Source of the DNA: Parasitella parasitica NRRL 2501 | Lineage: Eukaryota > Fungi > Mucoromycota | DNA length: 64,000 nucleotides | Assembly: GCA_025201805.1 (NCBI GenBank) | Contig: MU619253.1 | Coordinates: 64,202-128,201 of the forward strand | Reading direction: 5' to 3' | Part shown: positions 14,763 through 64,000 of the stretch, piece after piece | How the letters are laid out: every line of letters begins with the position of its first letter | Position numbering within the stretch: position 1 is the first letter of the stretch | The notes under the pieces: model-generated | Told to the model about the DNA's origin: nothing | The model's database searches: none | The model's input: the letters and a program-made list of their open reading frames with translations, nothing else | Program-made: the position numbers and the translations under genes

Positions 14763-15952
14763 CTAATAAATTGTCAATTTATACAGCTTCTCAACTGATT
14801 CGATAATTTCATCAATGATAGGATCATAAGCTTTCTCTTTGAGATCTTTTAGAGGAAGATCGATAGAAATTGTCTCCTTTTTTTCTGATAGAAAAACACG
14901 AGCAAAATTCTGTTTTTCAAGATCTTCGAAATCAATCCAATACTAGTTTTGTAAAATGTTAGTAGTCAAGATAAATGGAGTCAATGCTGCGTAGCATAAT
15001 GCACCTTCATTTTTTCTCTGAAATGTTGAAGGGCAAGTTCCTGTATGCTATCGCAATCATCACGGGAGTCCAATTGTTGTTTCTTCATGTCCTTTTTTAC
15101 AAGCTCCTTAACTTGTTCATCAATCTGCCCATCACCTAATTTATCAAGTGTAATCGAATCACCGGATTCTCTTGCGCTTAAATGTCCATTTTCTTTAATG
15201 ATTTCCATTGACTTGATTTTGGTGAACTTTGAGTCAATTTCACAGATAATAAAATTGTTTTCAATACGCTGGAGTTTCCTGATCTTCTTCGCCATTGCCA
15301 ATTGAGTGTCGACAATCAAGATTTTGTCCTCGTGGTCCTCGCTGGAGTAGATTTCAGCCAACTTCAGTGCTTCAAGAAGGTTTCCCTTATATTGAGCTTG
15401 TTGAAGAGTGAAGCAGTATTGAATGTTGGCTAGAGTAACATCGTCATGTTCTCTTCCATTTTCTTTCTCTTTGTGTTCAATTCTTGCCAAGACGTGAGCA
15501 TTGAACGCCTTCAAAAAATCTGCACAACTCTTTATGCCGTCTGGTGAATCTAGCTTGTCTGGCAAGCTTGTAATAGCGTTTGGATATCTTGCTATATTTC
15601 CTCCAATATATACGTCAGGTTTTGAGGAACCAGGGTAAGCAATAGCGGAAGGGATTTTGAAATCATATATGCTTTGACAAGACCTACATAAATAATGCGT
15701 ATTAGTGTTTGAGTGTGGTAACTGCAATAACTAGTGCACTCACCAATAGCCGACAGAGTGTACAGCAATTTGCTTGTCATTGTTTCTATCTTTTTCCCCC
15801 CTTATAGCATAACAGCAGCTAGATTCGGTAGTTCCAAAGTCTTTTGAGTGTTAGTTGAATCATCTTTTTAACGTATCCAATACCATAATAGTCTTACCAA
15901 TTCCAACAAAATACTTGTATTCTTGTTTAGTGGTAGTGTTTGTGTTTTCCAT
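14763..15952 (-). CDS. Degenerate HSPA12/Hsp70-like protein, copy A, C-terminally truncated (~336 aa; possibly a pseudogene)
   Basis: Same four-exon structure as 60437-62839 and ~95% identical by eye; VGI|DFGTTESSCCY phosphate-1 motif. Homology stops at 14777, then KLYKLTIY*. Confidence 0.75.
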
Positions 15953-17177
15953 GTTGATTGTTTTGATGGAGGAAAAAAAAAAGAACATATGACGATTGCA
16001 TGATTTATACAGTTTTTTTTTCTCTACATGTCAACATTCGAGATTCTTTATGCTCTTTTGATGGCAAAAGCATGAAACACAAGATGGCTCATTCTGAACT
16101 CATGAGCCGTAAGAGTACAGTATGCGCCGCCTAAACTGCTGTTTAAAGAATCTGTTACACCTGTTCGTTATTTTATTTCTTATATAAGGGAATGCAAAAT
16201 TCCATACATCAGCAGGCTTCTTTATGACAAAAAGAGATCGGAAAAGACGATCCGGCAAGTGCTATTATTATACATATTAGCATGCGCGTATCATCCTGAA
16301 CTGAGGTTCTTTATCTACACGAAGCTCTATATTAAACAATCCTGAAGAATAGTAATCACAATAAAAGTATCTAAATGAGCGCAGCTCTTATCATGTTTGT
16401 ATTTCTGGTTGCGATGAGACAATGGTATAACAATGTGATGACCACGAGTACAAATGCCTTTCAGTTCTTTATTAAATCGAATGCGCTATTAAGGTTATTA
16501 TTTACAATTTACAATTATTCTAACACACTCAGCTAACCATAAAAAAATAAAGATGGTTTATGTGTCTATTTTTGTTCAGCACAAATCAAAGACTTGATTT
16601 GATGAATGGAAGCAAGTAATCAAATGTTGTTGCAAATGCACGCGGGGTATGAATTGGGATTGAAGAGCCTATCTCATTTTTGTTCGAAATTACCATTTCC
16701 AGAAAAACAATCTTCTTTAAAGAATATTTACAGACCCAAATGAGTAGTTGACGACCAAAAAGGTAATAGTAACAATGGTAGGGCCAAACGTGCTCTGTGC
16801 ACTAGTATTATATAATTGTGAGTTTTATTTATTAAATTGCATCGATATTTTAGAAAAAGCGAGTTTGAAGTTTATTGCGAAAAACTCGAAAAATTTGGTC
16901 TGTAATCTGCAAATGTACATTACCATCATATAAGGACAATATTCTGGAACAAATGCAATTAATGTATACCTTAGTAAAAAACCTCGTTTTTCGACTGAAA
17001 AATTGACTTTTGTCAAATTGGACTTTTCAGACGAGGTACGATAAGGCCAAAATCGAGTTGAAAAAAAGTTTTCCATAAATCTGTAAATTTGCATCAGAAT
17101 GAGTAAGTGGACTGATAGCAATTGTCTAATATGGTTTTGAGTGAAATAGAAGGTCAAAAATCCACTTAAAACAGCAT
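14777..17177 (-). repeat. Dispersed cassette copy A (upstream region plus 5' part of the Hsp70-like gene)
   Basis: Near-identical to 44558-46080 (same strand) and to 59243-61613 (opposite strand). Confidence 0.95.
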
Positions 17178-17417
17178 CTAAGGTGCCAATTTTGTGTTTG
17201 CATAATGTTATGGCATGTTCTTTATTCAAAAATCAGCAATTTTTATATGTACAGTTGTGTATTTATGATTACTTTTAGATAAATCATTGGCATTGTTTGT
17301 AATATCCTGGGAATCGATACAAAAAAGCTACGTTAAAATACTAGCTTTGGCAGAATGATTCAAAGATGGTATTGTTTTGGCCAATTTCAGTTAATAGCTT
17401 TGCAGAGGCAAGCACGG

Positions 17418-41441: not shown

Positions 41442-42073
41442 ATGGTAGAGCACTTGTACAAGACTTTGGGGCTTCAGTATGGCGCCACCCTTATAGAAAT
41501 CAAAAAGGTTTTTACAATGGAATTATCATGCTTTTTAATTCACACCTAATCCGAACCATTTGCTTTGCTTGCCATTGTTTTTACAGGCCTATCGTTCTTT
41601 AGTAAAGTGTCAAAAAGCAGATTTATGAATCAAACATGGATGAACTAAAAGTAAAATCATAGGCCAAAGAATACCACCCTGACAAAAACAAAGAAGGTGC
41701 TGAAAAGGTACATTGAAGCCCATCCTATTTAAAGCAAACAGCTGATATTCTCTCGAGTTTAAAGAAATCAGTAATGCGTACAGTATACTATGCGATTCAG
41801 AAAAGCTATCCGAATACAAAAGAAAAAACCCTAGTGGAACATCATCTTCGACTTCATCATATACAGGCCCTAATGCCTCTGGATTCGATTTTCCATATGG
41901 CCCTGGATTCTTTACTCACTTTGATTTTGGACCCAACACACAAACACCACCACCACGACCTCGACATACAGAAAATCAAACATCGCCGCCACCGCCACCA
42001 GAGAGGCCACCACGTAAGTGTGTATTGCTCATTGTGATAGTCGCTATTGATCGACTAAATTATTATTATTGTC

Positions 42074-42104
<31 letters not shown>

Positions 42105-43262
42105 CCTATTTTGATATTCGAGCCAATTGCACACTTGAGCTGGATGATATATACAATGGCACAAAAATCAGCGTAGAATACGAAAAAGAAGTATACTGCA
42201 GTGTGTGCAAAAAGTAAGCAAACGGGTCCATGTCTCGTTTTTATAACTGATGAAAATTGTAGTTATAGGAAGCAGCCAAGCTTAAAACGATTTAGAGTGT
42301 GTGAGCGATGTGATGGATCAGGATTGATCAAAAAATACTTGGACAGCAGAAAAGCGCAAACACCAATCCGATGTGTTTTCTGTAAAGGCCATGGTCAACT
42401 AAAGTACTATATTGATTGTAAAAATTGCAAAGGCGCAAGTATAAAAAAATGCAGTGCGACAATCAAAATACCCAAAGGCATTCATGAGGGTCAAACACTC
42501 GGCGTAAAAGATAGAGGTTACACACGGTCCGACAAGACAAAGGGAAACTTGCGTGTTGAAATCAATGTTCTTGATCACCCAGTGTTCACGCGAGAGGGAG
42601 ACAATCTGCGCATTACGGCCAAGATATCCTTGAAAGAAGCCATCATGGGTTTTGCTGACATGAAACTATGCACTCATTTGGACGGTAGAAAGGTGCTCGT
42701 GTCTCAAATGTGTGGCTATACAATCAGACCAAATTCACAGAGACGACTTCCAGGCGAAGGAATGCCAATATACGGCAGTAAGTCAAATTCTTACGGTGAT
42801 TTGATCATCACGTTCGATGTGGAATGGCAAGATACCATACAAATACCGCCATCTAAAGCTGCCAAAGATGCAATCGACAATATGTTTCAAACGGACGAGC
42901 AGAAAAAGAATAGGGAAAATGTAATTGTCATTGATGACGATGAGGATAGAGAAGACTCACCAGCAAACGACAGACAAGTGAGCAATGACTCACCAACGAC
43001 ACAAAGTCCCTCAATGAAAGGAAATGATTTGGGAGAAATGTCTCAAAAATCCGATGGATTAGGCGACACTTCGGTAGGTGCGACCAGTTTCCATAATATA
43101 CTCAGGTTTTATAAACATTATTGCATATGGTAGGAGGACAGTGATGATGTAGAAAAGAGGTTTGAAGACTTTGAGGAGGCAAGGTCTTCGTTTTTTACAC
43201 ATTCTGATGAGGAGGACATGCCGATGAGTGATGCGGCGTCATTTTTAGATGGTTTATTTTAG
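41442..43262 (+). CDS. Divergent type I DnaJ/Hsp40 co-chaperone
   Basis: J-domain spread over short exons (LYKTLGL...EIKK|AYRSL|AKEYHPDKN...FKEISNAY), G/F/P-rich linker, CxxCxGxG zinc motifs, C-terminal HPVFTREGDNL...GEGMP...GDL. Confidence 0.88.
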
Positions 43263-43503: not shown

Positions 43504-44842
43504 TTAAGCTTTGCAAAAATTTGTCTGATTCAATGCACCCTTTGCTGCGTCAACATCATTGCTGTTAATTACTACCAAAATGTTTGCTTGCTGTAAATGT
43601 GAATTTTTTGTTTGATACAGGGTATTCGTCAATTCTTCCTTCCAGCCTTCGGGTTGGATCAATACACAAGTCAATTCTTGAATCAGACCTTGTTCGTATT
43701 TCTGGCTCACTTCCTCTCTCATTTTTTGGAACATTTTTCTCTTTTCTTTTCTCAACTCTGAAGCCAAGTGTTTATCGTCTTTCAATGTTTCCAATTTTTC
43801 ATTCAATTCATTGTTCAAGATTTGCAGTTGCTGAGTCATTTTCTTAAGTAATTCCTTTTTGTTCAAATTTCCTCTGATTTTCGCCGTGAAATTTTGTTTT
43901 ACTATGTCAAACTTTTTGTCAAGTCTTTCATTCAGTTTCTGTTCCAAATCTTTCATGAAGGTCTTTTTCCAATTTTGTTTCAATTGCTCCTTGGATTCTT
44001 CTTCGGACTGCTCTTCGGGCTGCTCTTCGGGCAGTTCTTCGGGCAGTTCTTCGGGCAGTTCTTCAGGCAGTTCTTCAGAACTTTTACAAGTTGATTCTTC
44101 AAGCTTTTGATCCGATTCTTGATTTTGAGTTTCGGTCTTCTCCTTGAGTTCTTCCAATTTTTGTTTCCACAATTCATCTTCTACTTCATCTTTCAATGCA
44201 TCCAAGATTTCATTCCAAACCTCTGATGCATCGTTAATGTCTGAGCCTATTTCTTTCTCAATATCCTCCTGCCCTTGGTTCAACTCCTTCTTCAACTCCT
44301 CGTATATTTCAAGACTGGATTCTTTCAAAATGTGGTCCAATTCTTCCAACTTGTCGTCAAAAACTTCATCCGATTCTTCTAGCCACTTTTCAAAGTCATC
44401 TTCCAATGCCACATATTTTGCGTTGATTTTTTCGAACAATGTGTCCTCCAATATTTTGTCCAGTTTTTCTTCCAAATGTTCTTTAGCGCACTCCAAAACC
44501 ATAGTTTGGAGTGTGTCTATCTTTGATTTACTTTTTCTTGCAGATCTTCTAGACCTTGGAAGGGATATTGCAATCATGTACGCTTTGGCCATACCTAAAT
44601 ACAGAATGCATGTTAGTGTTTGAGTCTGGTAATTACAATAACTAGTGCACTCACCAACACTTGACAGAGCGTACAATCCTTTCTCCGTCGTTTATAGCAT
44701 AACAGCTGCTAGACTCGATAGTTCCAAAGTCTTTTGAGCGTTAGTTGAATCATCTTTTTAACGTGTCTAATACCATAGTAGTCTTACCAATTCCAACAAA
44801 ATACTTGTAATCTTGTCTAGTGGTAGTGTTTGTGTTTTCCAT
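43504..44842 (-). pseudogene. Hsp70-like cassette copy B: internal deletion of the ATPase body, with an open coiled-coil ORF retained
   Basis: Exons 1-2 give VGI|DFGTIESSSCY. After IPS the homology breaks (44558) and the spliced frame stops at 44549-44551. Another frame encodes an E/K/L-rich coiled coil of ~350 aa ending NDVDAAKGAL. Confidence 0.7.
43999..44076 (-). repeat. 12-bp tandem repeat encoding (EELP)4-EEQP-EEQS
   Basis: Direct observation. Confidence 0.9.
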
Positions 44843-46490
44843 GTTGATTGTTTTGATGGAGGAAAAAAAAAAAAAAGAACACACAACAATTGCATGATTC
44901 ATATAGTTTTTTTTCCCTCTACATGTTAACATTCGAGATTCTTTATGTTCTTTTGATGGCAAAGCATGAAACACAAGATGGCTCATTCTGAACTCATGAG
45001 CCGTAAGAAGACGAGTACAGTATGCACCGCCTAAACTGCTGTTTTAAGAATCTGTTACACCTGTTCATTATTTTATTTCTTATATAAGGGAATGCAAAAT
45101 TCCATACATCAGCAGGCTTCTTTATGACAAAAAGAGATCAGCAAAGACGATCCGGCAAGTGCTATTATTATACATATTAGCATGCGCGTATCATCCTGAA
45201 CTGAGGTTCTTTGTCTACACGAAGCTCTATATTAAACAATCCTGAAGAATAGCAATCACAATAAAAGTATCTAAATGAGCGCAGCTCTTATCGTGTTTGT
45301 ATCTCGAGTTGCGATGAGACAATGTGATGACCAGGAGTACAAATGCTTTTTAATTCTTTATTAAATCGAATGCGTTATTAAGGTTCCGTAGATAATGTTA
45401 TTATTTACAATTTACAAATATTCTAAACCGCTCAGCTAACCAAAAAAAAAATAAAGATCGTTATGTGTCTATTTTTGTTCAGCACAAAATAAAGACTTGA
45501 TTTGATGAATGGAAGCAAGTAATCAAATGTTGTTGCAAATGCACGCGGGGTATGAATTGGGATTGAAGAGCCTATCTCATTTTTGTTCGAGATTGCCATT
45601 TCCAGAAAAACAATCTTCTTTAAAGAATATTTACAGACCCAAATGAGTAGTTGACGACCAAAAAGGTAATAGTAATAATGGTAGGGCCAAACGTGCTCTG
45701 TGCACTAGTATAATATAATTGTGAGTTTTATTTATTAAATTGCATCGATATTTTAGAAAAAGCGAGTTTGAAGTTTATTGCAAAAAACTCGAAAAAGTTG
45801 GTCTGTAATCTGCAAATGTACATTACCATCATATAAGGACAATATTCTGGAACAAATGCAATTAATGTATACCTTAGTAAAAAACCTCGTTTTTCGACTG
45901 AAAAATTGACTTTTGTCAAATTGGACTTTTCAGACGAGGTACCATAGGGCCAAAATCGAGTTGAAAAAAAGTTTTTCAGAAAACTGCAAATTTGCATCAG
46001 AATGAGTAAGTGGACTGATAGCAATTGTCTAATATGGTTTTGAGTGAAATAGAAGGTCAAAAATCCGCTTAAAACAGCATTTATTTGCTAAAATAAGCCA
46101 ATTTATAGGCCTGACGACATTTATTTGGTCCTTACAGTGGTTAATTAATCAATCATAGGTATTAAAAATATTACATGTAAAGATGAATATAACGACTTTG
46201 TATATATTCATGATTTTATAATAATGAGAACTTATTTTTTGCTAGCAGGCTTCATTCGAAAGTCTTGTTTCATTCACTGCTTGATACTGTTATATTGAAT
46301 ATGTATCGAATATAAAGTGGCAAGAGAGATGGATGTATGATAACAAAAAATAGAGGTATACTGTACTTTAGTGCCATGCTAACCGAGCTTGATAACGGTT
46401 TTGCCAGTTATGTCATTTTTAGTAGAAAACAGTTCTTTCAACAGTGAGGCTTTAGAGCCACCAAAGAGCCGAAGAAACGAAAGAGCTTTG
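44558..46490 (-). repeat. Dispersed cassette copy B
   Basis: Near-identical to copy A up to 46080 and to copy C up to ~46200; weaker similarity to copy C continues to ~46490. Confidence 0.92.
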
Positions 46491-47241
46491 AATCAAACAA
46501 GCCATATTAATTCCTGGCATTTAGTTAGGGTCTTATTTGGGGGTATCGCTATTAGCGCCGTAATTTGAAGCTATAAATTTAAAAGGATGTGCCGCGATAA
46601 AATAAAAGTACAGCACTTGGTCAATAAAAAGTGAGTATGTTTAGAATTCATCATTGGAAATGCGATCAATTCTACAATTTAAGGTTCAAGCGTTCTGACA
46701 AACAAGTATTGATTTGATTTTTTTGTATTGGCATCAAGTGTCTATTTTACAGGCCAAAAAGCTGTGAGGTCAGCCTCTCACAACATTTCAAGAAGGCTGA
46801 TTGCTATTCTTTTTACACGCTGCTCAAAATAACTTTTGGGTTTCGTGAAGTTAGATGTACATCTCAAAGGTTGGAGATGCTGAAGATCCCAGGTATTCCT
46901 TGTGCAAATTTCTCAAGGGATAGACCCAAGTCGATTACTTTATGCTGTATAACCAGTTGCCATGTAAACGCAAAAAAAAAATAAAATAAAATAAAAAATA
47001 AAAGAAAAAAAAAGTGCCATCATATACCCTGGCTCGATCCTCTCAGTATGCTTCAAAAGCACTGTTTCAGCGGTGGCAGCTCTTTGCAAGTTGAACGACA
47101 ATCAAATGATCTCATTGGCTTGTATGAAAAGGGGATCCTCCCTATCCCAAAACCAGAACCAAAAAAAAAAAAAAAAACTGCTTTGACCCACACACAAACA
47201 ATTTTTTTTTTTTTCTATACATAAAAGAAAAAAAAAAAAAA

Positions 47242-49320
<2,079 letters not shown>

Positions 49321-58884: not shown

Positions 58885-61613
58885 GCTCTTCGTTTCTTTA
58901 TCTCTTTGAAAGCTCACAAGTCCCACTATGAAGGAACTGTTTTCTATATGCTTGAGATGATTAGTGTAAAACTATCACCAAGATCAGCTGATATGTGCCT
59001 TTGCACCTTCATGATGTTTTTACTATCGTACATTCGTCTCTCTTGTCACTTTATTCAAAACTTTCGAATTTAGTCTACTAACAAAAAATAACCTCCCATT
59101 ATTGGAAAATCATAAATATATACAAAGTCGCTTTATTCATCTTTACATGTAATATTTTTAATACCTATGATTGATTAATTAACCACTGTAAGGACCAAAT
59201 AAATGTCGTCAGGCCTATAAATTGGCTTATTTTAGCAAATAAATGCTGTTTTAAGCGGATTTTTGACCTTCTATTTCACTCAAAACCATATTAGACAATT
59301 GCTATCAGTCCACTTACTCATTCTGATGCAAATTTGCAGTTTTCTGAAAAACTTTTTTTCAACTCGATTTTGGCCCTATGGTACCTCGTCTGAAAAGTCC
59401 AATTTGACAAAAGTCAATTTTTCAGTCGAAAAACGAGGTTTTTTACTAAGGTATACATTAATTGCATTTGTTCCAGAATATTGTCCTTATATGATGGTAA
59501 TGTACATTTGCAGATTACAGACCAAATTTTTCGAGTTTTTCGCAATAAACTCAAAACTCGCTTTTTCTAAAATATCAATGCAATTTAATAAATAAAACTC
59601 ACAAATAAATAACACTAGTGCACAGAGCACGTTTGGCCCTACCATTATTACTATTACCTTTTTGGTCGTCAACTACTCATTTGGGTCTGTAAATATTCTT
59701 TAAAGAAGATTGTTTTTCTGGAAATGGCAATTTCGAACAAAAATGAGACAGACTCTTCAATCCCAATTCATACCCCGCGTGCATTTGCAACAACATTTCA
59801 AGTCTTTGTTTTGTGCTGAACAAAAATAGACACATAAACTATCTTTATTTTTTTATGGTTAGCTGAGTGAGTTAGAATATTTGTAAATTGTAAATAATAA
59901 CCTTAAGATTTATTAAAGAACTGAAAAGCATTTGTACTCCTGGTCTTCACATTGTTGTACCATTGTCTCATCGCAACTCGAGATACAAACATGATAAGAG
60001 CTGCGCTCATTTAGATACTTTTATTGTGATTGCTATTCTTCAGGATTGTTTAACATAGAGCTTCGTGTAGACAAAGAACCTCAATTCAGGATGATACGCT
60101 CATGCTAATATGTAAAATAATGGCACTTGCGGATCGTCTTTGCCGATCTCTTTTTGTTATAAAGAAGCCTGCTGACGTATGGAATTTTGCATTCCCTTAT
60201 ATAAGAAATAAAATAATGAACAGGCGTAACAGATTGTTAAAACAGCAGTTTAGGCGGCGCATAGTGTACTCGTCTCCTTACGGCTCATGAGTTCAGAATG
60301 AGCCATCTTGTGTATCATGCTTTTGCCATCAAAAGAACAAAAGAATCTCGAATGTTAACATGTAGAGAAAAAAAACTATATAAATCATGCAATTATTATA
60401 TGTTCTTTTTTTTTTTCCTCCATCAAAACAATCAACATGGAAAACACAAACACTACCACTAAACAAGAATACAAGTATTTTGTTGGAATTGGTAAGACTA
60501 TTATGGTATTGGATACGTTAAAAAGATGATTCAACTAACACTCAAAAGACTTTGGAACTACCGAATCTAGCTGCTGTTATGCTATAAGGGGGGAAAAAGA
60601 TAGAAACAATGACAAGCAAATTGCTGTACACTCTGTCGGCTATTGGTGAGTGCACTAGTTATTGCAGTTACCACACTCAAACACTAATACGCATTATTTA
60701 TCTAGGTCTTGTCAAAGCATATTTGATTTCAAAATCCCTTCCGCTATTGCTTACCCTGATCCCTCAAAACCAGACGTATATATCGGAGGAAATATAGCAA
60801 GATATCCAAACGCTATTACAAGCTTGCCAGACAAGCTAGATTCACCAGACGGCATAAAGAGTTGTGCAGATTTTTTGAAGGCGTTCAATGCTCACGTCTT
60901 GGCAAGAATTGAACACAAAGAGAAAGAAAATGGAAGAGAACATGACGATGTTACTCTAGCCAACATTCAATACTGCTTCACTCTTCAACAAGCTCAATAT
61001 AAGGGAAACCTTCTTGAAGCACTGAAGTTGGCTGAAATCTACTCCAGCGAGGACCACAAGGACAAAATCTTGATTGTCGACACTCAATTGGCAATGGCGA
61101 AGAAGATCAGGAAACTCCAGCGTATTGAAAACAATTTTATTATCTGTGAAATTGACTCAAAGTTCACCAAAATCACGTCAATGGAAATCATTAACGAAAA
61201 TGGACGTTTAAGCGCAAGAGAATCCGGTGATTCGATTACACTTGATAAATTAGGTGACGAGCAGATTGATGAACAAGTTAAGGAGCTTGTAAAAAAGGAC
61301 ATGAAGAAACAACAATTGGACTCCCGTGATGATTGCGATAGCATACAGGAACTTGCCCTTCAATATTTCAGAAAAAAAATGAAGGTACATATATGCTACC
61401 CATCATTGACTCCATTTATCCTGACTACTAACATTTTACAAAACTAGTATTGGATTGATTTCGAAGATCTTGAAAAACAGAATTTTGCTCGTGTTTGTCT
61501 ACCAGGAAAAAAGGAGACAATTTCTATCGATCTTCCTCTAAAAGATCTCAAAGAGAGAGCTTATGATCCTATGATTGATGAAATTATCGAATCAGTTGAG
61601 AAGCTGTATAAAT
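58885..61613 (+). repeat. Dispersed cassette copy C (inverted relative to A and B)
   Basis: Reverse-complement match to 14777-17177 and to 44558-46490. Confidence 0.93.
59179..59700 (+). mobile_element. Possible non-autonomous DNA transposon/MITE-like segment inside the cassette (also ~45630-46144 and, partially, ~16720-17177)
   Basis: Non-coding, A/T-run-rich block beginning TTAA-CCACTGTAAGGACCAAAT (piggyBac-like terminus); only a weak matching opposite end (ATTTGGGTCTGTA). Confidence 0.3.
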
Positions 61614-62839
61614 CAGAATTTGCGGTACATGTAGTCTTGAGCGGAGGTGGGCAGTCAATCTCAGATTATATGAAGCAAAAATTGGAAGAAAAATTGAGCA
61701 AAAGATTGGAAAGAGATGTACAAGAAAAGCTTGACAAAGAATTGAATGAGCTACTGGAACAGGTTAAAGAAACAACAATTAACGAAAAATTGGATGAGGC
61801 GTATGATTGTCTGGTTCAAGAATTGCGTTACTACACAAAAGAGGCAACTAGAAGGAGAATGATCGACAACCAATACTATGAAGCCTTATACAAATTTACT
61901 GCTTTGAAAGACAACTCAAAGTTGCAACACGCATTGAAGAAGGAACTAGATGAAAAGCTGAACGAATTTAAGCGTGATGATACTCTTTTGGCTAGATTTA
62001 CAAAAGGTTTGCGAGCCAAACTACATTCTAAAGAAAACGTGGTTCTCGAGTCAAACAAAGAGCAAAATCAAAACCAACTCGACAATTCTTATTTGGAGGA
62101 ATTGATAAAAGCTATGAAAGGCAGCATCTCTGATACATTGGAGAATATACTTTGCAATATATTCGAGGAACAAGCAGCTGAATTCAGGAACAACTATTCA
62201 GTCAAAGGATCAGACGCAATTTTTGATCAAAATTTGAAAGAGTTTGATCAAAAGTTAAAAGAATTGGGAGGCTTGGATGTCAAAGAAGTCCAAGAAAAAT
62301 TGAAGAAGTACGAACTGGATACAATTCTTGGCCAAAGATTAAAGTATCATTGCGAAATTTTGGGTGAGAAGGAATTGACAGATGGCAACCAGATAGAAGA
62401 TGAATGTGAGAACCCTTACGAACAATTGACCAAAAAAGAAGAGTCGAGAAAAAGATGGGAACGCTTTTACAAGATAAGATTGGAATGCGTGCCAAGACAT
62501 GAATGGGAAGACGAACTGAAAAAATTTGAATGCAATTTCGACAAAGGAAAAATAGAATTGTATGATGATTTCATTGAAAAAAACAAGATGGAATCCGAGG
62601 AAGAATTGGACCTGAAATCGGCAGATTTGAAGGAAGATTTCAACGAACAGCTCTCACTTCTTAAGGAAAGATTTGATAACGAATTGCAAACTTTGAAGCA
62701 CAAAATAGGAATAATGATCAATGAATCGGAACGACAACGAGTCTTGAACGAACGCTTCGCTGAAAATAACATTGTTAGAATAATTGGCGATATATCAGCA
62801 GCTGAAGCCGCAGTAGGCATCTTAACCGCAGAGCTTTAA
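60437..62839 (+). CDS. Full-length degenerate HSPA12/Hsp70-like protein with internal coiled-coil insertion, copy C (~740 aa)
   Basis: Exons 60437-60491, 60549-60645, 60706-61384 and 61448-62839 splice in frame. Motifs: VGIDFGTTESSCCY, KIPSAIAY, YCFT, VVLSGGGQSISDY, terminal AEAAVG. Confidence 0.85.
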
Positions 62840-63049
62840 ATCCTAACTACATAGGCTTAAAATTTCTACGGTTTTACTTCATGCATACGGCACAATACAA
62901 TAAAATTCATTTGAAACCAAATTAGGCATATCTTTTAATCTTCTTCCAAACCTCTTTTCTTATTCCAATTTTGCAAAACATTAGTTTTTCAAATATCTTG
63001 CATGGAAGCCCGATCGAGTAGAGGAAATACGGCATGAAATGGACGAAAT

Positions 63050-63440
63050 GAAAGTGCGCCATTTTGGACAGAGAAAAAACCACAAGCAGTGCTACCAACC
63101 CATCTTTTCAAAAGTGTTTCGCAAATGAGAAGGCTATTCTGAAGCCTATATAATCACTATAACCACCGTTATTGCTAATCTTTTAAGAGGCAACAGCAAT
63201 GAGTGTAAGGGCGTGTAAGTAAAAAATCAGATGTTATAACTCTGCTTTGAGTTGTTCGTTCATGATTGCAAGTTTGGAAAAACTGCTGCAAATAATATCT
63301 CTGGAGCCTATGCCTTTCGTGTTCAAGGCAGTGTTTATCATCTAATGAGATCTTTTTTGTTTCATACAAAAAACATGAGCTCTACTACCCTGGCTTGACT
63401 GAAATTTGCTCTAATACACATCTTTGACGCTGATAATATG
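63050..63440 (+). mobile_element. Helitron Rep/helicase N-terminal remnant (frameshifts and stops)
   Basis: Pieces translate to NPSFQKC, IRCYNSALS, ANNISGAYAFRVQGSVYHLM and KFALIHIFD. These match, in order, the Helitron RepHel motifs P.F..CC, IR.YN.A.SF, G.Y.FRI.G..YH and PKFAQ.YI.D. Confidence 0.75.
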
Positions 63441-64000
63441 TTGAGTAGTTATAGCGTGAATATTATACTCAATTGGCAGTATGATAAATGAATGGATTCA
63501 TTTGAAATGATCACAACAAATGTTATGAGACGCGCGGGACATTTATTTTGACTTTGAGTGAGGTTTACAACTGTAATTGTGTATTAGCGGGACACCATAA
63601 ATGTGAGAGTGTATTAATATATTATCAGGGGGTAAGATCGTTATAAAAGCTTCTAAACGATACTCTTGAGTAGAATGTATATGTCTGAAAGAATATAGGC
63701 AATAAACATAAAGAAAGATTTATTGAATATGTACTTGAAGATGATAACTTTCGATATGTAAAAGATGATAATTTCGATTAACAAAACTGGTAAAATGAGA
63801 AAACGGATCAAGTCCTACTTGGAGATTATATATTCAAATGTAATTTCATTTAGAAGTTGGTCAGGTAATAACATAATAGCATAATTTATTGAATATAATA
63901 AAGGAGGAAGAAGGAAGAAAATAAGAAAATAGATTATTTGTCTGCAAAGATGGAGCCTTGATGTTTGCTCAAGTAGTCAACTGACCTAGCAAGTTGAAGT

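What the first reader, a model, noticed from the sequence alone, without database searches (positions are those of the whole stretch)
60437..62839. Amplifying pseudo-Hsp70 cassette with a variable coiled coil inserted inside the ATPase fold
Seen: the spliced 740-aa protein keeps phosphate-1 (GIDFGTTES) and follows the HSPA12 motif order. However, TVPA becomes TLQQ, EPEAAA becomes DTQLAMA, and phosphate-2 DxGGGT becomes EIDSKFT, so ATP hydrolysis is doubtful. Between the adenosine loop (VLSGGGQSISDY) and a terminal connect-2-like motif (AEAAVG) lie ~365 aa of E/K/L heptad-rich sequence, and there is no substrate-binding domain. Three copies in 50 kb share the promoter and N-terminal exons at high identity but differ strongly in the insert: present, different or absent. 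Inference: a constant nucleotide-binding scaffold plus a variable rod. This architecture is reminiscent of polymorphic non-self-recognition, effector or selfish-element systems, and I do not recognise it from described families.
Basis: partly seen in the sequence, partly recalled or inferred. Interest (0 to 1): 0.8.

Follow-up and report, generated by a model that had tools for sequence, protein, structure and literature searches.

The report
Pseudo-Hsp70 gene with helical insert
A mould-parasitic fungus (Parasitella) carries a real, fast-evolving gene for an Hsp70-type ATPase domain that has lost its catalytic motifs and gained a ~360-residue helical insert. The neighbouring "variant copies" are broken duplicates or a separate paralogue, not a designed variable system.

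Summary
The four-exon model (60437-62839, +) equals the public 740-aa Parasitella parasitica protein BD408DRAFT_480732. Its first ~345 residues are an Hsp70-type nucleotide-binding domain: profile-profile E 2.4e-25 against fungal Hsp70-family proteins; an AlphaFold model of copy B (pLDDT 85.7) hits DnaK/BiP domains. Phosphate-2 and the catalytic Glu motif are replaced. About 360 E/K/L-rich helical residues with weak heptad signal sit inside the helix after the adenosine loop. There is no substrate-binding domain.

The "variable rod / non-self recognition" reading is mostly not supported:
- Copy B stops at a duplication breakpoint.
- A fourth copy on another contig (D, also noted by the scan as s1-685921) has a microhomology-flanked 82-codon deletion.
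- Copy C is a different, older paralogue with a homogenised 5' end, and runs into a stop under A-like splicing.
- True homologues have collinear inserts (90% in D, 36% in the other Parasitella assembly), with dN/dS 0.47.

New here: this gene descends from the N-terminal pseudo-domain of tandem "pseudo-ATPase + ATPase" HSPA12-like proteins conserved across Mucoraceae.

Most likely it is a non-catalytic adaptor of HSPA12-like ATPases (inferred). I class it as a new variant of a known kind, of moderate interest.

The parts
60437..62839 (+). Gene A: intact 4-exon gene (exons 60437-60491, 60549-60645, 60706-61384, 61448-62839) for a 740-aa pseudo-Hsp70 with helical insert
   Evidence: GT-AG splice model is identical to public protein P0002
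60485..60568 (+). Phosphate-1 motif GIDFGTTES (residues 17-25), split by intron 1 at GI|D. The same intron position is seen in the tandem E-type relatives
60980..61168 (+). Degenerate catalytic core: TLQQ (60980-60991), DTQLAMA (61079-61099), EIDSKFT (61148-61168). These replace TVPA, EPEAAA and DAGGGT
   Evidence: hhalign column mapping to canonical Hsp70-family profile; the same substitutions occur in all pseudo-domains of the clade
61634..61669 (+). Adenosine-loop motif VLSGGGQSISDY (residues 340-351)
   Evidence: aligned with ..GG.G.S.YL of E-type and canonical relatives
61670..62764 (+). E/K/L-rich all-helical insert, about 350-365 residues (352-716). It is placed inside the helix that follows the adenosine loop (YMKQKL ... 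RVLNERFAENN)
   Evidence: AF2 secondary structure shows about 13 helices at low confidence. Composition and weak heptad signal. No internal repeats. No paralogue elsewhere in the genome except copy D
62765..62836 (+). C-terminal return to the ATPase fold: last strand and helix, NNIVRIIGDISAAEAAVGIL..
   Evidence: local alignment to tails of E-type pseudo-domains, shuffle p 0.003-0.017
59056..60436 (+). Upstream region shared with copies B, C and (from 59690) D. It holds a ~430-bp dispersed repeat at about 59320-59746 and promoter blocks conserved in the other Parasitella assembly (60067-60175)
62840..63526 (+). 3' flank shared only with copy D (94-95%). The A-D homology ends within ~30 bp of where a dispersed repeat begins (about 63496)
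14763..17180 (-). Copy B: a segmental duplicate of the promoter plus codons 1-332. The homology ends at 14777, then come 4 foreign codons and a stop (CDS 15952-14763, 336 aa, P0003). It lacks the adenosine loop, the insert and the tail
43504..46267 (-). Copy C: a 5' module (46267-44558, 87-91% to A/B) joined to an unrelated helical ORF that ends in the family's C-terminal motif. With A-like splicing the frame hits TAG at 44551-44549. Only a distal acceptor (after ..aaaaag, about 44531) would keep the frame

Best explanation
Gene A encodes a Parasitella-specific, non-catalytic Hsp70-type (HSPA12-like) nucleotide-binding domain.

Origin (shown):
- It descends from the N-terminal pseudo-ATPase domain of tandem 'pseudo-domain + active domain' proteins conserved in Mucoraceae.
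- It lost the second, active domain.
- It acquired a helical insert of about 360 residues inside the helix after the adenosine loop.
- The lineage is kept by weak purifying selection, so it makes a functional protein.

The copies in this genome (shown): recent segmental duplication and 5' homogenisation spread the promoter and first exons. Only A is intact. B is truncated, D has an 82-codon deletion in lobe II, and C is an older paralogue with a converted 5' end.

Mechanism (inferred): the dead domain works as an adaptor or regulator. It pairs through its conserved former active-site face with active HSPA12-like ATPases, in trans as its ancestor does in cis. The helical insert serves for self-association or tethering.
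For: Fold and homology:
- hhalign probability 99.7%, E 2.4e-25 over 301 columns against canonical fungal proteins. Those proteins pass Pfam HSP70's threshold.
- AF2 model of copy B (95% identical): pLDDT 85.7, pTM 0.78.
- Top Foldseek PDB hits are all DnaK/BiP/Hsp70 nucleotide-binding domains, E 4.5e-11, probability 1.00, TM 0.57.

Dead motifs are shared by the whole pseudo-domain clade. The homologue in the other assembly has also lost the GGG of the adenosine loop and carries an insertion in phosphate-1.

Origin:
- In a maximum-likelihood tree, A/B/D plus the other assembly's copy form a clade (SH-aLRT 100).
- That clade nests inside the N-terminal pseudo-domains of tandem proteins (95-100) and lies apart from their active domains.
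- The tandem type occurs in Parasitella, at least 8 Mucor species, Thamnidium and Pilobolus.
- The intron positions GI|DFGT and ..MK|Y are shared.

Restriction: an exhaustive HMMER scan of 1.84 billion representatives gave only 15 hits, and the insert-bearing ones are all from Parasitella.

Selection: A versus the other assembly's orthologue has dS 0.94 and omega 0.47 (bootstrap 0.35-0.58). The domain gives 0.35 and the insert 0.56. Both ORFs are open and collinear.

Damage in the copies. Recent pairs show relaxed constraint: A-B omega 1.2; A-D insert 1.15.

Possible partners exist: at least 10 loci of canonical HSPA12-like domains in this genome.
Against: - No expression, binding or localisation data exist, so the adaptor role is inference by analogy.
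- The full-length AF2 model is poor (pLDDT 55, pTM 0.30). Docking of the C-terminal tail back into the fold and the shape of the insert are therefore not shown.
- Phosphate-1 and the GGG loop are intact in A, so residual nucleotide binding cannot be excluded.
- omega around 0.5 is weak constraint.
- dS near 1 is close to saturation.
- The tree used a quick search and has long branches.
Confidence: 0.55

Rival explanations
1. One reading: a polymorphic non-self-recognition, effector or selfish cassette, in which a constant scaffold carries a hypervariable rod that determines specificity. In this fusion-parasitic fungus the setting could be hyphal fusion with hosts.
For: - The family is restricted to Parasitella.
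- It evolves much faster than its tandem relative: 56% (domain) and 36% (insert) identity between assemblies, against 82%.
- It is not syntenic between the two assemblies.
- Copy number differs between them.
- The insert evolves faster than the domain.
- A- and C-type genes share a 5' module and lie head-to-head in the other assembly.
Against: - Inserts of homologues are collinear and under purifying selection (omega 0.56).
- A versus D insert is 90.5% identical against 93.9% for the domain, so there is no hypervariable contrast.
- The differences between copies come from truncation, deletion and paralogy.
- There is no HET, NLR, toxin or secretion signal.
- No terminal repeats or transposase were found.
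Confidence: 0.08
2. All copies, A included, are non-functional relics of a decaying duplicated gene fragment, and the open frame of A is fortuitous.
For: - Three of the four copies are visibly damaged.
- Recent pairs show omega of about 1.
- The catalytic motifs are gone.
- No curated family matches.
- No expression evidence is available here.
Against: - A 2.2-kb frame stays open and collinear in two lineages separated by dS of about 0.94.
- omega is 0.47, with a bootstrap upper bound of 0.58.
- Splice sites are intact.
- Promoter blocks are conserved between assemblies.
Confidence: 0.12
3. It is still a nucleotide-dependent machine: an atypical ATPase or ATP-binding switch whose helical insert moves with the nucleotide state.
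For: - Phosphate-1 (GIDFGTT) and the adenosine GGG loop are intact in A.
- From general knowledge, some atypical Hsp70s such as Ssz1 bind ATP without needing hydrolysis.
Against: - The glycine loop of phosphate-2 and the catalytic Glu position are replaced in every member of the clade.
- The orthologue in the other assembly has additionally lost the GGG loop and has an insertion in phosphate-1. Nucleotide binding is therefore not a conserved requirement.
Confidence: 0.08
4. A structural or cytoskeletal role: the actin-like domain polymerises or caps filaments, and the helical insert bundles them. HSPA12-like ATPases play no part.
For: - It has an actin-like fold.
- It has a long helical region.
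- Sequence blocks at the former cleft are strongly conserved, which could be an interface.
Against: - The nearest structures are Hsp70 domains, not actin, ParM or MreB.
- Ancestry lies within Hsp70-family tandem proteins.
- The heptad signal is weak.
- There is nothing direct in its favour.
Confidence: 0.07

Closest known systems
HSPA12-type atypical Hsp70s (animal HSPA12A/B and the fungal 'Hsp70 family / actin-like ATPase' proteins such as P0015, P0016 and the Trichoderma proteins P0040-44)
   Same: - Same domain fold and motif order.
- No classical substrate-binding domain.
- Detectable homology: phmmer E 1e-5 to 5e-4; hhalign E 2.4e-25.
- Lineage-specific multi-copy families: at least 10 loci in this genome.
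   Different: - The canonical members keep TVPA, EPEAAA, DAGGGT and GGFG, and they pass Pfam HSP70. Gene A has lost the first three and fails Pfam.
- A lacks the beta-rich C-terminal extension of the fungal members.
- A carries a helical insert of about 360 residues.
Mucoraceae tandem 'pseudo-domain + active domain' Hsp70-like proteins (P0005 of this genome on contig C24; P0023-P0030, P0007)
   Same: - The N-terminal pseudo-domain carries the same replacement motifs (TLQH, D.Y.AMAKY, CD.D..Y).
- Intron positions are the same.
- A nests within this clade.
   Different: - A is free-standing, with no second active domain.
- It has the helical insert.
- It evolves much faster: 56% identity against 82% between the two Parasitella assemblies.
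- It is confined to Parasitella.
Non-hydrolysing Hsp70-superfamily partners: Ssz1 of the ribosome-associated complex, and Hsp110/Sse1 (from general knowledge; a RAC structure, 5mb9, is among the fold hits)
   Same: These are Hsp70-fold domains that act as partners or regulators of an active Hsp70 rather than as chaperone ATPases themselves. They are the model for the proposed adaptor role.
   Different: - Those proteins keep the nucleotide-binding motifs and a substrate-binding-domain-derived part.
- They are ancient and slowly evolving.
- None has a helical insert at this position.
Actin-like-fold proteins with inserted domains (for example FtsA subdomain 1C, or the diol dehydratase reactivase insert; from general knowledge)
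   Same: A foreign module is inserted into the fold without destroying it.
   Different: - The insertion site is different.
- Those inserts are globular, not a long E/K/L-rich helical region.
- Those proteins are bacterial.

Membership tests
Hsp70 / actin-like ATPase nucleotide-binding domain (fold level) | Three-dimensional similarity to solved Hsp70 nucleotide-binding domains | tested here: met
   AF2 model of copy B (95% identical to A): pLDDT 85.7, pTM 0.78. The best Foldseek PDB hits listed are Hsp70-superfamily chains (DnaK, BiP, Hsp70 and relatives); best E 4.5e-11, probability 1.00, TM 0.57.
Hsp70 / actin-like ATPase nucleotide-binding domain (fold level) | Sequence-profile homology to bona fide Hsp70-family proteins | tested here: met
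   hhalign probability 99.7%, E 2.4e-25, 301 columns. The targets pass Pfam PF00012's gathering score.
Hsp70 protein family as curated (Pfam PF00012) | Score above the gathering threshold | tested here: not met
   No PF00012 hit for the exons or for P0002, P0003 or P0004, even at E up to 1. phmmer and a profile search against PDB sequences were also blank.
Catalytically competent Hsp70 ATPase | Phosphate-1, phosphate-2 (D.GGGT), catalytic Glu (EP.AAA) and adenosine GG loop all present | tested here: not met
   Phosphate-1 and the GGG loop are present in A. Phosphate-2 reads EIDSKFT and EPEAAA reads DTQLAMA. The orthologue P0004 also lacks GGG.
Canonical Hsp70 chaperone | Substrate-binding domain and lid after the ATPase domain | tested here: not met
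   The protein ends at residue 740, directly after the last helix of the domain. No such domain was found by Pfam.
HSPA12 subfamily | Closer to animal HSPA12A/B than to other Hsp70 clades | not tested
   No HSPA12A/B reference sequence or CDD model was available by reference. 'HSPA12-like' rests on motif resemblance recalled from memory, and on homology to fungal proteins that sources call Hsp70 family or actin-like ATPase.
HSPA12-like fungal proteins | Beta-rich C-terminal extension after the domain (..R..YG.. onward) | tested here: not met
   It is present in P0015, P0016 and the tandem proteins and absent from A.
Mucoraceae tandem pseudo-domain + active-domain proteins | Pseudo-domain signature motifs and phylogenetic placement in the N-terminal-domain clade | tested here: met
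   Alignment. The tree gives SH-aLRT 95-100 for nesting (quick search, long branches noted).
Mucoraceae tandem pseudo-domain + active-domain proteins | Second, canonical ATPase domain in the same polypeptide | tested here: not met
   A has no D.GGGT-bearing second domain.
Classical coiled coil | Sustained heptad periodicity of hydrophobic residues | tested here: inconclusive
   The mean best-register score is 0.326 against 0.268 in shuffles (sd 0.023). Only 8% of 28-residue windows exceed the 95th percentile, as in the ATPase domain. AF2 predicts about 13 helices of 6-45 residues with breaks, at low confidence.
Polymorphic recognition / incompatibility systems | Hypervariable, positively selected specificity region between conserved flanks; known HET/NLR/toxin modules | tested here: not met
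   The insert is collinear, with omega 0.56 between assemblies. A-D insert is 90.5% identical against 93.9% for the domain. Pfam finds no such domain. Population-level polymorphism is not testable here.
Transposon cargo (Helitron or other) | Terminal repeats or hairpin ends, target-site duplications, a transposase/Rep gene, many copies | tested here: inconclusive
   There are only four copies, with different endpoints. One weak 18-nt inverted pair was found. Dispersed repeats lie at the flanks (about 59320-59746, and from 63496 on), but the unit itself is not dispersed.

The most novel reading that the evidence does not exclude
A-type and C-type genes together form a Parasitella-only, rapidly relocating two-gene module. 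They share a promoter and 5' exons, lie head-to-head in the other assembly, and each carries its own helical region that is about 35% conserved. The module would act during hyphal fusion with host moulds, in non-self interaction or host manipulation, with the helical regions as specificity surfaces mounted on a dead Hsp70 fold.
Probability: 0.07. Interest if true: 0.75.

Novelty: new variant of a known kind. Interest (0 to 1): 0.4.

Why it matters
It is a clean natural example of a pseudo-enzyme made from the Hsp70 ATPase fold. The fold tolerates a helical insert of about 360 residues in lobe IIA, and the gene has been kept by selection in a fusion-parasitic fungus.

The ancestry is more broadly useful. 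Mucoraceae conserve tandem 'dead domain + live domain' HSPA12-like proteins, and I found no paper on them in four literature searches. HSPA12-type proteins have no agreed mechanism. A conserved cis-pairing of a dead and a live domain, plus a free-standing dead domain, gives testable handles on whether these ATPases work as domain-domain pairs.

For the scan, it shows that the 'variable cassette' pattern here is duplication debris plus paralogy.

Tried and rejected
- Pfam on exons and whole proteins: nothing above noise for A-type.
- phmmer and a pseudo-domain profile against PDB sequences: only chance helical hits.
- Word-based search with copy D: only the three proteins of this genome, because helical words swamped the candidate list.
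- The same search with copy C's helical ORF: nothing, not even a self-hit. C is therefore probably not annotated, and the blank is uninformative.
- ESM Atlas look-alikes of the insert: no usable feature hit, and structural rows all at TM 0.27 or below.
- Internal repeats in the insert: none, so an origin by tandem repeat expansion is not visible.
- Terminal inverted repeats around the duplicated unit: one weak 18-nt pair, not convincing.
- Full-length AF2 model of A with 13 sequences: pLDDT 55, so I used it for secondary structure only and did not send it to fold search.
- DnaJ gene beside copy C: considered as a functional neighbour and rejected, because the other assembly's locus has no DnaJ.
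- Literature searches for fungal HSPA12-like, tandem or pseudo-Hsp70 proteins: nothing relevant.
- The B-D dN/dS value is invalid (forced alignment across the deletion) and is not used.
Full report
**Organism and gene model.** The window is fungal: short GT-AG introns with CTAAC-type branch sites and about 38% GC. Protein names returned later identify it as Parasitella parasitica, a mucoralean fusion parasite of other moulds.
- The four-exon model 60437-60491, 60549-60645, 60706-61384, 61448-62839 translates to 740 aa.
- I did not submit a self-joined sequence to any search, fold or family tool. The joined translation was made only inside scripts, to check the frame and to compare sequences locally.
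- The word search with copy D's uninterrupted ORF returned the public protein P0002 (BD408DRAFT_480732). It is letter-for-letter my model. All later whole-protein steps used that database id.

**Fold and motifs.** Curated libraries do not see the protein. Pfam and PDB sequence searches are blank, even with a family profile. Homology is nevertheless firm.
- An exhaustive phmmer scan of 1.84 billion representatives with copy B's product (P0003, the ATPase part only) found 15 proteins. Among them are canonical fungal Hsp70-family proteins at E 1e-5 to 5e-4, and these pass Pfam HSP70's threshold.
- A profile of pseudo-domains against a profile of canonical ones gives probability 99.7%, E 2.4e-25 over 301 columns.
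- An AlphaFold model of P0003 with 35 aligned relatives reached pLDDT 85.7 and pTM 0.78.
- Its best PDB matches are all DnaK, BiP or Hsp70 nucleotide-binding domains (E 4.5e-11, probability 1.00, TM about 0.57).
- So the actin-like/Hsp70 fold is confirmed, and the catalytic glycine loop and Glu position are gone.

**The insert.**
- Relatives without an insert read ..GT.SNLQYMKQRLNAIASNVIIVSNDDLSSAHGAV...
- In A, YMKQKL (351-356) opens the insert. ..RQRVLNERFAENNIVRIIGDISAAEAAV closes it and aligns with the same stretch (shuffle p 0.003-0.017). The insert therefore sits inside the helix after the adenosine loop, in lobe IIA.
- It is 42% E, K and L, has almost no proline, and is predicted entirely helical in about 13 helices with breaks. 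The full-length model is poor, however (pLDDT 55).
- Heptad periodicity is only marginally above shuffles.
- It has no internal repeats, no other paralogue in the genome, and no look-alike in the Atlas.

**The copies.** Self-comparison and a whole-genome search give four 5' modules.
- B (17180-14777, minus) is 95% identical to A up to A's position 61613. It then reads four foreign codons and a stop. It is a duplicate cut at the breakpoint, not an 'insert-less allele'.
- D (contig C1) shares 59690-63526 with A. It has lost 309 nt, which is 82 codons plus intron 3, between two copies of a 10-nt direct repeat, GATTGATGAA. This removes most of lobe IIB and part of IIA.
- C (46267-44558, minus) shares the promoter, exons 1-2 and 12 codons of exon 3. 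With A-like splicing it then meets TAG at 44551-44549. The long helical ORF downstream is in another frame and is not alignable to A's insert. It does end in the family's C-terminal motif.
- In A, the homology with D ends within about 30 bp of where a dispersed repeat starts (about 63496). A 430-bp dispersed repeat lies upstream at about 59320-59746. No transposon ends were found.
- Recent pairs show no constraint: A-B omega 1.2 (3 synonymous against 15 non-synonymous changes), and A-D insert 1.15. This fits redundant copies in decay.

**Ancestry.**
- On contig C24 a 1004-aa gene (P0005) encodes two Hsp70-type domains in tandem. The N-terminal one carries the same dead motifs (TLQH, DSYTAMA, DVDSKY) and no insert. 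It is joined through a GI|DFGT intron to a canonical one with TVPT, NEPEAAA and DAGGGT.
- This tandem type is conserved in both Parasitella assemblies, many Mucor species, Thamnidium and Pilobolus.
- In a maximum-likelihood tree of single domains, the insert-bearing proteins form one clade (SH-aLRT 100). That clade nests among the N-terminal pseudo-domains (95-100), far from the active domains (quick search, long branches).
- Catalytic death therefore predates the gene. The novelty of A is that it became free-standing and gained the insert.

**The other Parasitella assembly.**
- P0004 (748 aa, GCA_000938895.1) has the same architecture.
- Against A, the domain is 56% identical. The insert is 36% identical, but collinear with few gaps.
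- dS is 0.94 and omega 0.47 (bootstrap 0.35-0.58). The domain gives 0.35 and the insert 0.56.
- For scale, the tandem protein is 82% identical between assemblies, and flanking Sec24 and peptidase DNA is 74-82% identical. The two 'P. parasitica' genomes are thus deeply diverged, and the A-type gene evolves several times faster than its relative while still under purifying selection.
- P0004 has also lost the GGG loop.
- It is not syntenic with A or D.
- Head-to-head with it lies an orthologue of copy C's helical region (33% identity, E 9e-28), interrupted by an assembly gap.
- So A-type and C-type inserts are two old lineages. C's 87-91% identity to A/B in the 5' part must reflect recent homogenisation.

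**Interpretation.**
- Shown: a real, selectively maintained gene for a dead Hsp70-type domain with an internal helical insert, derived from a conserved tandem protein, plus three damaged or chimeric relatives.
- Inferred: it acts as a non-catalytic adaptor that pairs with active HSPA12-like ATPases (at least 10 loci in the genome), as its ancestor presumably does in cis. The insert would serve self-association or tethering.
- The strongly conserved replacement motifs at the former cleft argue for a retained interface or ligand site rather than decay.

**Limits.**
- No expression data were available.
- No HSPA12A/B reference was available for a direct subfamily test.
- There is no reliable full-length structure.
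- dS is near saturation.
- The word search for copy C was blank and is uninformative.

Noticed in passing
G000:C24:217500-224500 (L009 about 5730-2420, minus; L004): A 1004-aa gene (P0005) encodes a dead Hsp70-type domain fused through a GI|DFGT intron to a canonical HSPA12-like domain plus a beta-rich tail. Orthologues of about 950-1050 aa occur in Mucor species, Thamnidium and Pilobolus. I found no paper on this tandem architecture.
   Followed up: partly
window 41600-43133 (+): A DnaJ-type gene (DnaJ_C plus zinc-finger domain) lies convergent to copy C, about 370 bp from its stop. It is not adjacent in the other Parasitella assembly, so this is probably coincidence.
   Followed up: partly
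window 59320-59746 and 63496-64000: Two dispersed repeat families flank gene A. One is a ~430-bp element with at least 10 diverged copies at 66-87% identity. The other starts at about 63496 and has at least 10 copies at 87-91%. The A-D homology ends where the second begins.
   Followed up: partly
window 62840-63496: The stretch flagged elsewhere as a Helitron remnant matches only copy D's 3' flank in the whole genome (94%). It does not behave as a dispersed element.
   Followed up: partly
L011 (GCA_000938895.1 LN732826) versus G000 contig C75: The two assemblies labelled Parasitella parasitica differ by 18-26% at the DNA level in Sec24 and a subtilase gene, and the locus is rearranged. They look like distinct species-level lineages.
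   Followed up: partly
L011 6025-6380: A ~350-bp element next to the C-type gene of the other assembly has more than 20 copies (about 67-70% identity) scattered over G000 contigs. It is probably a small non-autonomous transposon.
   Followed up: no
G000 contigs C3, C208, C111, C10, C24, C80, C184, C40, C6, C14: At least 10 further loci encode canonical HSPA12-like domains, including an apparent head-to-head pair on C80. Several matches contain stop codons that may be introns or breaks.
   Followed up: no
window 47140-49320: There are long homopolymer and dipeptide coding repeats (poly-Q over 60 residues, His-Asn repeats) in and next to a C2H2 zinc-finger-like ORF.
   Followed up: no
P0009 (ENA metagenome protein, 2157 aa): It matched residues 25-56 of the query in 16 separate stretches. 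This suggests a repeat protein built from a short segment resembling the first beta-hairpin. I did not examine it.
   Followed up: no
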